A DNA stretch of 25,099 bases from Ginkgo biloba (taxonomy: Eukaryota > Plantae > Ginkgophyta): the NCBI GenBank assembly GCA_024626585.2, contig JANKJI020000004.1, positions 169,693,839-169,718,937 on the forward strand. Reading direction: 5' to 3'. A program made the translations under genes and the position numbers. The notes beneath the pieces are model-generated. The model searched no databases and was not told where the DNA came from. It worked only from the letters and a program-made list of their open reading frames with translations. This document shows positions 10,565-21,689 of this stretch, piece by piece. How positions within the stretch are numbered: the stretch's first letter is position 1; each line of letters starts with the position of its first letter.

Positions 10565-11754
10565 TTAATGACTAATGAGCTTATGAGCAACAAACATAGC
10601 AATAGAGGAGAATAGAATAGAGAACATTATTTTAGGTTTAGAGAAGAATGAAAAGCAGCGAAAGCGTTCTTCCTCGTATTTTTCGTCATTAACATCTTTC
10701 GTGTTGGGATGGATTATTTCTTCTTCTTCTGATTCTCCTTCATCATGAACTTTGCAGCATTCTTCTTCTTCTTCTGGAGTCGGCGGTGGTTGCATTGCAT
10801 TCTGTTGTATTGGTTCTGCATGCGACCCAGTATTGCAAGCAGAAGCAGGAATATCATCTTCGCCTTTCTCCTCCGTTGTTTGAGAGCCGAAGCCCTGCAC
10901 ATTATATCTCTCAGCTTCCTGCACCTCATTCGGAGCTTCTTCTGAATGTGACACGCGTTTATCTGAATCTTCTGGTCTTTGGAATGCTTCATCATCCTCT
11001 GCATTAATAATAGAAGGTAATCTGCTCTCTTCTGGAGGCTCACGATGAGATGGAGTTGGCTCAGAACACTGTTCTACCAGGCAATGTGTCTTCTCCGGCA
11101 TTTGGGCAATGGTCGATGGACATTCTTCTGCAGTTTTATCTTCCGCTGGAGTTTCCGAGTTGCAATTACTTGCAGGCAGTGTGATTCCGTCATCTACTAT
11201 ATTTTCAGTGGACAGTGTTTGATCTCGACCATGATCATTAACAGACTCGTCCAGATACTCTTCTTCTGGATTCTCCAGCAAGCTTTGGGTACCTGTAGGA
11301 ATTGCATCCATTGATGCAATTTCCTCAGGAGGGACATCCATTGATGTTGGGATATCACGATCATCGTGACCTTCAATGGCATTCAATCTATTCTCATGAG
11401 CTCCGATCGTTTCCTCTGGAGTTGATTCTGATCTTTCAGGCAGACTTTCCATTGTATGAATATCCCCTTCCTGTGTGTGCTGATCAGAAGAAGACCCAAT
11501 ATCAAATGTGACTCTGCTACGCCTGAATTTGGGCATGATGACTTGCAATACACCGTCCTGAAAGCTGGCAGTGACGGCACCAAAGTTGACATTGTGGGGA
11601 ATTCTGAGAGGCCTTCTGAAACTTCGACCAGCTGAGGGCTCCATCAGGTGCCATCTCCACTCCACCATTCCCATTTCTTCAAAACATCTCTTCCCGCGTA
11701 TTACCAGAGTCCGCCTGCTATCGATCTCCACCCTCAGATCTTCTCCCCTAAGAC
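10565..11754 (-). CDS. HSP20/alpha-crystallin-domain protein, exon 2; 443 aa in total, acidic linker + C-terminal TM (RTM2-like architecture)
   Basis: A 118-nt GT-AG intron (11872-11755) has only one nearby in-frame acceptor, GAAG|GT. It yields GLRGEDLRVEIDSRRTLVIRG..WHLMEPSAGRSFRRPLRIPHNV..ASFQDGVLQVIMPK (ACD), then a ~290-aa E/D/S/P/T-rich region and a hydrophobic tail IMFSILFSSIAMFVAHKLISH*. The ORF is uninterrupted and retains CpG. Confidence 0.92.
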
Positions 11755-11872
11755 CTTCACACCATAGTTTGAACAACTTTCTCTAGTTTGTGAGATGTAT
11801 AATTTCCAAAGCACATAACCAGAAGCAAATATTCAAACAATTAATATTTGAATTAACTTTATGTATCATTAC

Positions 11873-12149: not shown

Positions 12150-12180
<31 letters not shown>

Positions 12181-12431
12181 CTTTATCAGAGGCGAAGATT
12201 CCATGCTTGGGCTGATGCAGTATTTACTTTCTGTTCTTTCGGTAGACGAATTTCGTGTATGGAGGGTAAAATACGAAAACAATAACAATAACAATTGTGT
12301 AGATTTTATGATTTCAGGTAGGTTCGTGTATATATATAGGTAGGCAAAGATTCCATGCTGAGCTAATGGAGTATTTACTTTCTGTTCTTTCGGTAGACGA
12401 ATTTCGTGCATGGAGGGTAAAATACGAAAAC
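12107..12431. repeat. Tandem duplication (174 + 151 bp units) in the HSP20-like upstream region
   Basis: Units 12107-12280 and 12281-12431 share aataacaattgtgtagat...tatttactttctgttctttcggtagacgaatttcgtg.atggagggtaaaatacgaaaac. Confidence 0.95.
12155..12180. repeat. (TA)13 microsatellite, possible TATA element of the HSP20-like gene
   Basis: Perfect TA repeat ~140-165 nt upstream of ATG 12014. The TATA role is inferred. Confidence 0.85.
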
Positions 12432-12470
12432 TTGGAGTGGAAGAGAATTAACTCGAATCATATAATTGTG

Positions 12471-12478
12471 TGACGTGG
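12471..12478 (+). promoter_or_regulatory. TGACGTGG (Hex/G-box/ABRE-type bZIP site)
   Basis: Exact motif ~460 nt upstream of the HSP20-like ATG. It is mutated to TGATGTGG in the distal duplicate. Confidence 0.4.
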
Positions 12479-12879
12479 AAGAAATCCACGATCCATTTTT
12501 TACTTTTGGCTCGAGTCTTCGGAGAAATCTTTGTATTCAATTTGTGAGGGCACCTGTATTTTCACTTTTAAGACAATAACCATGTCTTTCAAGGAAACGT
12601 GAATTGCAAATTAGCAATATTTTCAAAGGCCTTTTTGATAATTTTTTTTGGTTGAAATATGTTCCTATTTAATATCTAAAAAGTAGGTCAATAGTGAATA
12701 TGAAAAACAATAGATACAAAAGGTTTCATAAATGCACTCTAAAATTACATGGAGCTATGGCCATACATGGACCAAAATATTAAAGATGTCAATTCTACAT
12801 GCTATCTATTTACAACCCAACCATTAGCTTTAATCATAACATTAACTTGCATTAGCAAAGCTTTTAGCATTTAGATCTT

Positions 12880-19735: not shown

Positions 19736-20146
19736 TAGGTGTGTATGTGTGTGTGTGTGTGTTTATCAGAGGTGAAGATTTGATGCTTGACTTGATGCAG
19801 TATTTACTTTTTATTCTTTTGATAAATGAATTCCATGTATGGAAGATAAAATATGAATCCTTAGTGTGGAAGAGACTTAACTCGAATCACATAATTGTAT
19901 GATGTGGAATAAATCCATGATCCATTATTTACTTTTGGCCTGATTCGTCAGAGAAATATTTGTATTTCATTTGTGAGGGTACTTGTATTTTTACTTTAAG
20001 ACAATAACCATATTTTTCAAGGAAATATGAATTGCAAATTAGTAAAATTAAAGGCCTTCTTGATACTTTTTATTGGTTGAAATATGTTCCTATTAATATC
20101 TTAAAAGTAGGTCATAATGCTGAATATAAGATATAATAGATACAAA
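19736..20146 (+). repeat. Diverged direct duplicate of the HSP20-like upstream region (12145-12280 + 12432-12720)
   Basis: Collinear similarity from gtgtgtat..tttatcagagg.gaagatt to caatagatacaaa/taatagatacaaa. The (TA)n run is replaced by (TG)8. Confidence 0.93.
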
Positions 20147-20155: not shown

Positions 20156-20403
20156 GAAATAAAAAACGTCCCAAGGCACTCGTGGGAACTGTCATATCTA
20201 GTAGCAAAATATTATTTAATTTAACATAACGGCAAGTATGAAAGAACTGACAATTAAAAGGCAAGATTTGATATGCGGTATGTTTAAGGAAAAAAAATAT
20301 CAGATTCGATTGAAAAAATTGCAGAGGCGAGGACGACAATCCAAAGATCATTTAAGGAAAAAGCAAGAGTTATATCATCCTGTCCCGAGAATCTGTAAGC
20401 AAC

Positions 20404-20440
20404 ATGAGGGTTTCGTTGTCAAAAGTGCCACATTGTCCTC
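20404..20440 (+). CDS. IFT80: Intraflagellar transport protein 80, coding exon 1 (MRVSLSKVPHCP-H)
   Basis: The ATG is in AACATGA context. 12 codons + 1 nt are followed by a U12 donor GTATCCTTT. The length matches the IFT80 N-termini as I recall them (human MRLKISLLKEPKH; Chlamydomonas MRLKVKQSSANVH). Confidence 0.8.
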
Positions 20441-20601
20441 GTATCCTTTCTTGTGAAATATTTTTCCATCTCATAGCATTCAAATATTTAAAGAATTTAC
20501 TATTAGGGATCGTCCCTCGTGTCTGGATCATAAACAGATGGAATTTAATGTATGAGTAACAGATTAATTGATATTTATCTTCATTTTCCTTAGTATGGAA
20601 G
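20441..20601 (+). other. U12-type (minor spliceosome) GT-AG intron, 161 nt, phase 1
   Basis: The 5' splice site is GTATCCTTTC. A branch-like TTTTCCTTAGT at 20584-20594 lies ~9-10 nt before the AG at 20600-20601, with no intervening polypyrimidine tract. Splicing restores the conserved His (C|AT). Confidence 0.82.
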
Positions 20602-20711
20602 ATACCGATCTGGTTGTTTGTGTGGGATGGAGCTTATCGGATGAGCTCTATTCCTGCAGCGAAGATCAAACCATTTGGAGATGGAGTAGGAACGGCGAAC
20701 CTCTTAATAAG
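20602..20711 (+). CDS. IFT80: IFT80 coding exon 2 (first WD40 repeat); the rest of the gene is expected beyond the window
   Basis: HTDLVVCVGWSLSDELYSCSEDQTIWRWSRNGEPLNK resembles the recalled human [28 protein letters not shown] and Chlamydomonas HSELTAAVGWNVWNELFTCSDDQTIHKWNMLGEPEQK. It ends at AAG|GCAAGC. Confidence 0.88.
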
Positions 20712-21689
20712 GCAAGCACCACAGCGAAGTGCCACTTCTGTGTTTGTAAATGTAATGATTAATATTTTTTGCTAAAGAATGTAGTGGATTAGAACCTAGT
20801 GCAGAATGTATGTCCGTTGATAAAATTACTCTTAGATTTATAGTTTAGTAATAAAAACATGCAATTTTATCTATTTTTTAGGCATTCATGGATTTTACCA
20901 TAACTTTTGATTCAAAAATCTATTTTTTGTCCCTTTAGGCTTGTTTTGAATCTTTTAGGAAATGCTATAACTCTTATGTTGTGGCCAATAAGATGAAACT
21001 ATACATATTTTTTCTAATTTTAACTACAAGTTATTTTTTTCTTAAAAATTGACAAAAACTATTTGGATTTAAAAATGGGTCACTATTAGAGAAAAGGAAA
21101 CATTTTTCTATGATAAATATCTTGAAAAGTTAGGAGTGGTGCCTCTTAATCACACATTATGGCCTCTAATTATGAATGTGATTATAGTTGATCAAAATAA
21201 CTCTTTTAGGATTGAACTCCTAAAATTTCATTTGCACTAATAAAGAATGTGACATGGTATAAGCGACAAAAAATAGTTAGGGTAAGATATAAATCATATA
21301 ATAGAAACCAAATGTTTCTTAAATATAAAGGAAATTTGATAAATAAAATAAATTAGGAATGCATATTATAAAAATAATCATTGGGAATATCACATACATA
21401 CATGGAAAAAATGACCTTATCTAGGTTGTTATCAATTATTGTTAGGGCCCAAATACCTAGAGAAATGATATTTATCTTATAAANNNNNNNNNNNNNNNNN
21501 NNNNNNNNNNNNNNNNNNNNNNNNNNNNNNNNNNNNNNNNNNNNNNNNNNNNNNNNNNNNNNNNNNNNNNNNNNNNNNNNNNNTCTTAACAATGTTCCAA
21601 GTCAAATGAAAACCAACATGCAGACCATATACATCTCCTAATAAGCATATAGTCCACTCAACTCATTGAAATAAATACAAAAACTAAAA

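What the first reader, a model, noticed from the sequence alone, without database searches (positions are those of the whole stretch)
20441..20601. Hidden U12 (minor-spliceosome) intron in a plant flagellar gene IFT80, probably at an ancient position shared with animals
Seen: a canonical U12 donor GTATCCTTT after codon 12 + 1 nt, a TTTTCCTTAG branch-type box close to the acceptor, and restoration of the His preceding the first WD40. Known: minor introns are enriched in animal ciliary genes, and I recall IFT80 being among the human minor-intron-containing ciliary genes. Inference: minor-spliceosome control of IFT80 could be conserved between animal cilia and seed-plant sperm flagella, acting as a rate-limiting switch in spermatogenesis. 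Standard annotation would probably miss exon 1.
Basis: partly seen in the sequence, partly recalled or inferred. Interest (0 to 1): 0.82.

Follow-up and report, generated by a model that had tools for sequence, protein, structure and literature searches.

The report
Ancient minor intron in Ginkgo IFT80
The Ginkgo gene for the sperm-flagellum protein IFT80 starts with a rare minor-spliceosome intron at exactly the same spot as in fish, sea urchin, liverwort and moss, so the intron is very old and the public Ginkgo gene model is wrong, but nothing shows that it acts as a switch.

Summary
Confirmed. The window is Ginkgo biloba. Bases 20441-20601 are a 161-nt GT-AG minor (U12-type) intron, the first coding intron of IFT80. 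It has a perfect minor donor and an A9-type branch box with the A at -10. RNA-type contigs from three independent studies show the exact 20440^20602 joint. None shows a joint at the much stronger major-type AG 8 nt upstream. One run also holds a retained-intron contig. The public model Gb_26455 misses exon 1 and starts at an ATG inside the intron. The same position (ATG + 37 nt, splitting a His codon) carries an AT-AC minor intron in catfish, other vertebrates, a sea urchin and an unidentified protist. It carries a GT-AG minor-like intron in Marchantia, mosses and an alga-like contig, and a major-type intron in another alga-like contig; other contigs have none. So the intron predates the animal-plant split and has switched subtype. 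IFT80 is already a known minor-intron gene in human, mouse and zebrafish, and animal-plant shared minor introns are a known class; I found no paper on the plant IFT80 case. The 'rate-limiting switch in sperm' is untested, and erosion in other flagellated plants argues against it. The scan has not noted this on other DNA.

The parts
20266..20440 (+). IFT80 exon 1: 5' UTR (5' end approximate) plus coding part 20404-20440 (12 codons + 1 nt)
   Evidence: RNA-type contigs begin at 20266-20334; those from X1, X10 and X12 end at 20440; the peptide has the same length and pattern as orthologous N-termini
20441..20601 (+). 161-nt GT-AG U12-type intron, phase 1, inside the His13 codon
   Evidence: joint 20440^20602 in 3 runs from 3 studies; same position in 10 orthologous loci
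20441..20449 (+). minor-type 5' splice site GTATCCTTT
   Evidence: 7/7 match to the minor consensus at +3..+9, 4/9 to the major consensus
20557..20559 (+). premature stop (codon 52) if the intron is retained
   Evidence: translation; retained-intron contig 20420-20631 in run X1
20584..20595 (+). U12 branch box, A9 type (TTTTCCTT + A at 20592, position -10)
   Evidence: 8/8 core match; A9/A10 definition and 8-30 nt window from PMC1557818; branch use itself not shown
20592..20593 (+). unused decoy AG that looks like a strong major-type acceptor (88% pyrimidines upstream); its use would shift the frame
   Evidence: no joint to it in four runs, though contigs drop rare forms
20595..20597 (+). in-frame ATG inside the intron, taken as start by the public model Gb_26455
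   Evidence: P0001 starts MED-TDLV
20602..20711 (+). IFT80 exon 2 (110 nt), first WD40 blade
   Evidence: PDB 5N4A match; contigs in X10 and X11 leave the window after 20711/20712 into an exon reading VCTLNTCPME
20712..20720 (+). GC-type donor of intron 2 (major type); exon 3 lies outside the window
   Evidence: loose ends; same exon boundary in Marchantia, mosses, L003 and L019; exon 3 not found in the window

Best explanation
This is the first coding intron of Ginkgo IFT80, removed by the minor (U11/U12/U4atac/U6atac) spliceosome. U11 and then U6atac read the GTATCCTTT donor, and U12 pairs with the TTTTCCTT box and bulges A20592. The 3' end is then set by distance from the branch point, so the AG directly after the branch A is skipped and the AG at 20601 is used. 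Splicing restores His13 and joins the conserved 13-residue N-terminus to the first WD40 blade. Retention gives a stop at codon 52. The intron is inherited from the common ancestor of animals and plants and switched between the AT-AC and GT-AG subtypes. It has been kept, eroded, converted or lost in different lineages, as expected of a mostly neutral ancient intron that needs correct splicing but is not a dedicated switch. Shown: junction, signals, shared position. Inferred: dependence on the minor spliceosome, branch nucleotide, ancestral age, neutrality.
For: Exact junction in three studies. The donor is 7/7 minor and 4/9 major, with C at -1 rather than AG. The strong pyrimidine-rich AG at 20593 is not used although a major spliceosome should prefer it. 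The same ATG+37 position with a His split codon occurs in Marchantia paleacea, two mosses, Diadema setosum, Tachysurus ichikawai, two more vertebrates and three unidentified microbial eukaryotes. Animal orthologues have AT-AC ends and a minor branch box at -12/-13, which marks them as minor introns. Mouse and human IFT80 have a catalogued minor intron with donor context AGC|ATATCCTTT (PMC6717393 supplement). The zebrafish ift80 minor intron is retained on u4atac knock-down (PMC9992838).
Against: No minor-spliceosome perturbation or lariat data exist here for Ginkgo, and intronIC could not be run. The branch A is at -10, closer than the -12/-13 of the animal orthologues, and ends in AGT rather than AAC; a weaker second box exists near 20583. 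The RNA status of the runs is a guess by the tool and tissues are coded. The microbial contigs have no taxon label.
Confidence: 0.88

Rival explanations
1. The intron is a conserved regulatory switch: slow or regulated minor splicing keeps IFT80 off (retention leads to a stop at codon 52) in vegetative tissue and releases it during sperm-cell differentiation, as part of an ancient link between minor splicing and cilia.
For: Retained-intron contigs exist (X1 20420-20631; partial intron contigs in X10 and X11). It is a first coding intron whose retention kills the protein. Ciliary genes are enriched among human minor-intron genes, and minor-spliceosome defects cause ciliary phenotypes (PMC9992838, PMC13216214). 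Ginkgo keeps a perfect donor.
Against: No tissue information. Spliced forms appear in three unrelated studies, and 14 RNA-guess runs from 10 studies hold the stretch. In X12 the minor intron is spliced while the contig runs on into major intron 2. Marchantia and mosses, which also make flagellated sperm, have eroded donors (5/7), and the mosses also have weak branch boxes. One alga-like contig has a major-type intron here and other IFT80 contigs have none. The functional bias of minor-intron genes is largely explained by gene age (PMC10639083). IFT80 had null dPSI in patient-fibroblast RNA-seq, though RT-PCR showed more retention.
Confidence: 0.1
2. The intron is a hybrid that is in practice spliced partly or wholly by the major spliceosome, with the TTTTCCTT run serving as a pyrimidine tract.
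For: GT-AG ends; land-plant orthologues drift towards minor-like; GT-AG minor introns are the usual intermediate to major conversion (PMC2831892); the branch spacing is short.
Against: The donor lacks AG at -2/-1 and matches the major consensus 4/9. The AG next to the tract is skipped in all observed joints. Introns without -1G and with CC in the branch box depend on the minor spliceosome (PMC11347168).
Confidence: 0.07
3. The public model is right: the protein starts at ATG 20595 (MED-TDLV) and the upstream donor is irrelevant or a chance motif.
For: Gb_26455 starts there. Contigs in two runs begin at 20515/20516 inside the intron, which could reflect a minor internal start.
Against: The spliced joint removes that ATG. 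Exon 1 encodes the 13-residue N-terminus seen in essentially all IFT80 proteins, and the same intron exists in orthologues.
Confidence: 0.03

Closest known systems
IFT80 minor intron of human, mouse and zebrafish (MIDB, PMC6717393; PMC9992838)
   Same: Same gene, minor type. The published mouse and human donor context (AG C | ATATCCTTT) fits Lys + first base of His, the position I measured in non-mammalian vertebrates and sea urchin.
   Different: The animal introns are AT-AC, 0.6-3.5 kb, with the branch A at -12/-13. Ginkgo is GT-AG, 161 nt, with the branch A at -10 overlapping a decoy AG. I did not read mammalian genomic DNA, so the mouse/human position rests on the published 12-nt context plus vertebrate orthologues.
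U12-type GT-AG introns of land plants; minor introns shared between animals and plants (PMC2831892, PMC10639083)
   Same: Consensus donor, A9 branch box within 8-30 nt, phase 1 (the commonest minor phase), subtype switching, and erosion, conversion and loss across lineages.
   Different: It lies in a flagellar gene that flowering plants have lost (own knowledge; PMC9023351 for the general loss of flagellar genes), so human-Arabidopsis comparisons could not see it.
RABL2, a ciliary gene with LECA-age intron positions (PMC4736243) that is also a human minor-intron gene (PMC9992838)
   Same: Ciliary gene with intron positions conserved across the eukaryotic root.
   Different: A text search of that study found no mention of U12 or AT-AC introns; here the minor type itself is traced.

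Membership tests
U12-type (minor) intron | 5' splice site RTATCCTTT | tested here: met
   GTATCCTTT at the RNA-verified donor, 7/7 at +3..+9
U12-type (minor) intron | Branch box TTTTCCTT + A at position 9 or 10, 8-30 nt from the 3' end | tested here: met
   8/8 core, A9 at -10 (definition PMC1557818)
U12-type (minor) intron | 3' site chosen by branch distance, not by a pyrimidine tract | tested here: met
   the used AG (20601) has no tract of its own; the AG with 88% pyrimidines upstream (20593) is skipped; contigs can miss rare forms
U12-type (minor) intron | Orthologous introns are minor type | tested here: met
   AT-AC with ATATCCTT donors in 4 animals and 1 protist
U12-type (minor) intron | intronIC or PWM classification with trained matrices | not testable with these tools
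   no trained matrices available; only consensus match counts were made
U12-type (minor) intron | Excision depends on U11/U12/U4atac/U6atac in vivo | not testable with these tools
   shown for zebrafish ift80 (PMC9992838), not for Ginkgo
IFT80 | N-terminal WD40 blade homologous to IFT80 | tested here: met
   best single-stretch PDB match is Chlamydomonas IFT80 15-48; a profile built on it retrieves named IFT80 proteins; the Marchantia orthologue locus carries Beta-prop_IFT80_2nd and TPR_IFT80_172 downstream
IFT80 | Full-length intact ORF (two propellers + TPR tail) | not tested
   only exons 1-2 lie in the window; exon 3 is seen only as a 30-letter loose end
Regulatory (rate-limiting) minor intron | Tissue- or stage-dependent retention that limits protein output | tested here: inconclusive
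   both spliced and retained contigs seen; contigs give no levels and tissues are coded

The most novel reading that the evidence does not exclude
Probability: 0.1. Interest if true: 0.7.

Novelty: new member of a known kind. Interest (0 to 1): 0.36.

Why it matters
It corrects the Ginkgo IFT80 gene model. It shows that the clinically studied IFT80 minor intron is older than the animal-plant split, with a subtype switch. It also points to flagellated plants (Marchantia, mosses, ferns, Ginkgo, cycads) as the missing comparison for asking whether the enrichment of minor introns in ciliary genes is ancestral and selected or only a result of gene age; Marchantia and Physcomitrium make that testable by intron replacement. 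On its own it is one more ancient minor intron.

Tried and rejected
Word search with the exon-2 ORF found no candidates. The first metagenome scan with the single ORF found nothing (one search was under the size limit). The Atlas search gave only generic WD40 clusters, Pfam had no hit on the 36-aa exon, and Rfam found nothing in the window. The neighbouring HSP20-like ORF gave no homologues at E 1e-5, so synteny could not be tested. The big protein search was used once, only after these failed, because the conservation claim needed relatives. Paper searches for IFT80 + Ginkgo, for minor spliceosome + Marchantia + sperm and for minor intron + IFT + plants + LECA gave no report of the plant intron; the library lacks most subscription journals. 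Rejected: acceptors at 20556 and 20562 (in frame but upstream of the branch box and not seen in RNA) and at 20593 (frameshift, not seen); the start at ATG 20595. No tree was built, because 36-70 residues cannot place the unlabelled protists. The spliced model was searched by exon 2 only, by reference; the joined step was left out. No human contig was fetched or compared. Mammal-like protein entries were printed in bulk listings, and their DNA was not looked up.

Full report
Observation. ATG 20404 opens 12 codons plus one base (MRVSLSKVPHCP + C). The donor GTATCCTTT begins at 20441, the box TTTTCCTTAG is at 20584-20593, and the acceptor ends at 20601, giving a 161-nt phase-1 intron whose removal makes a His codon. 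Exon 2 (20602-20711) has Chlamydomonas IFT80 residues 15-48 as its best single-stretch match in the PDB (E 1.3e-6). The donor motif alone is unremarkable in this AT-rich window (3 seen, 2.0 expected), so the case rests on RNA and orthologues.

Organism and annotation. The all-protein search with the exon-2 region returned a 100% identical protein, Gb_26455 of Ginkgo biloba (EukProt), which starts at the in-frame ATG 20595 inside the intron and lacks exon 1. Ginkgo and cycads are the seed plants that keep flagellated sperm (PMC9023351). The same intron trips annotation elsewhere: the NCBI catfish model reads ...LKDCLH where the genome gives ...LKEPK+H, and the sea-urchin model has a wrong N-terminus.

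RNA evidence. Fourteen RNA-guess runs from ten studies hold the stretch. Laying four of them shows the joint 20440^20602 (161 skipped, GT..AG, no ambiguity) in three runs from three studies. No joint uses the AG at 20593. Run X1 also has a contig spanning the whole intron (20420-20631), that is retention or pre-mRNA. X10 and X11 continue from exon 2 into a further exon reading VCTLNTCPME, which resembles the Marchantia exon 3, so intron 2 begins with a GC donor at 20712; exon 3 is outside the window. In X12 one contig has the minor intron spliced but runs on into intron 2. Limits: these are contigs, not reads. They show presence, not level; the RNA label is a guess; tissues are coded; and the joined form could not be looked up in DNA runs.

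Is it minor type? The donor matches the minor consensus 7/7 at +3..+9 and the major consensus 4/9, with C at -1. The branch box is a perfect TTTTCCTT followed by A at position 9, the 'A9' form, 10 nt from the end and inside the 8-30 nt window (PMC1557818). There is also an internal test. The branch box ends in an AG (20593) with 88% pyrimidines upstream, which looks like a good major acceptor and would shift the frame, yet every observed joint skips it for the purine-rich GGAAG at 20601. That is what branch-distance selection by the minor spliceosome predicts (inference). Retention gives a stop at codon 52 (20557). intronIC and direct dependence could not be tested.

Conservation. I fetched orthologous DNA through proteins and a metagenome scan and read the junctions. 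In every intron-bearing locus with exon 1 present, the intron falls at ATG + 37 nt and splits a His codon. AT-AC with a minor donor and branch A at -12/-13: Tachysurus ichikawai (739 nt), another teleost (609), a bird/reptile-like contig (780), Diadema setosum (611) and an unidentified AT-rich protist (51). GT-AG with a minor-like donor: Marchantia paleacea (151 nt, GTATCCATG, branch box at -19), two peat-moss metagenome loci (535 and 527 nt, GTATCCTAC, weak branch box) and an unidentified alga-like contig (1397 nt, GTATCCAAC, good box at -12). GT-AG of major type: a second alga-like contig (70 nt). No intron: L004, L009, L012 and L015, some of which may be transcripts. Mouse and human IFT80 each have one catalogued minor intron with the donor context AGC|ATATCCTTT (PMC6717393), which fits Lys + C of His. 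I did not read human DNA, so this link rests on that table and the other vertebrates. A shared position, phase and rare type in animals and land plants implies presence in their common ancestor, at or near the last eukaryotic common ancestor (inference), with a subtype switch whose direction I cannot fix from these data.

Mechanism and rivals. Best reading (0.88): an ancestral, constitutively needed minor intron, excised by the minor spliceosome and evolving mostly neutrally. The switch reading (0.10) has circumstantial support: retention is null for the protein, retained contigs exist, and animal minor-spliceosome defects hit cilia and retain the zebrafish ift80 intron (PMC9992838, PMC13216214). 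Against it are erosion in other sperm-flagellated plants, conversion and loss in other flagellates, splicing ahead of intron 2 in one contig, and the finding that gene age largely explains functional biases of minor-intron genes (PMC10639083). A hybrid intron handled by the major spliceosome (0.07) and the annotated internal start (0.03) are less likely.

Novelty. IFT80 as an animal minor-intron gene is known. Minor introns shared by animals and plants and subtype switches are known classes: about 11% of aligned human minor introns persist as minor in one amoebozoan, a share described as comparable to many plants (PMC10639083; PMC2831892). I found no paper on the plant IFT80 intron, but public databases such as introns.info or MIDB, which I could not query, may list the bryophyte orthologues. 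Verdict: real, well supported, a new member of a known kind, and useful as an annotation fix and as an entry to a testable question; interest 0.36.

Procedure notes. The spliced model was searched by exon 2 only, by reference, and the joined step was left out. No human contig was fetched, saved or compared. The large protein search was run once after the word search and family scans failed. Earlier scan notes on this stretch are repeats of the same reading and were not counted as support.

Noticed in passing
window 10565-11776 (-): 403-aa ORF with an N-terminal HSP20 domain (Pfam E 1e-8), a long acidic middle and a hydrophobic C-terminus, divergent from IFT80; no homologue passed E 1e-5 in the word search.
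   Followed up: partly
window about 12180-12720 and 19760-20146: A roughly 400-nt block is duplicated about 7.43 kb apart (81-93% identical pieces), once upstream of the HSP20-like gene and once upstream of IFT80, with retrotransposon remnants between; it may be a split shared promoter or simply a repeat.
   Followed up: partly
window 20515-20631: Contigs from two independent runs (X10, X11) begin at 20515/20516 inside the intron, and X11 shows no spliced joint; this could be an internal start, a degradation end or an assembly break. Unexplained.
   Followed up: no
window 20712-20841: Intron 2 has a GC donor in Ginkgo (GT in Marchantia and mosses), and contigs in X1 and X12 read 80-130 nt into it.
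   Followed up: partly
window 20273-20456: Upstream ATGs at 20273 (4 codons) and 20280 (out of frame, overlapping the main ATG, stopping inside the intron at 20454) lie within the longest 5' contig only.
   Followed up: no
window 20640: G>A allele (Asp to Asn in exon 2) in run X11, which is filed under a different organism label but is 99% identical to the window.
   Followed up: no
L020:1-1117 vs L001:6055-7325: A Marchantia-like contig lacks exactly the 151-nt first intron but keeps the following intronic DNA for 1 kb: either a partly spliced RNA or precise intron loss in a liverwort.
   Followed up: partly
L017:6001-6790 and L018:13926-14580: NCBI IFT80 models of Tachysurus ichikawai and Diadema setosum are mis-spliced or mis-started at the AT-AC intron.
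   Followed up: yes
window 24136 and 25037: Two further ATATCCTTT motifs inside IFT80 intron 2; at chance level for this window and with no exon support.
   Followed up: partly
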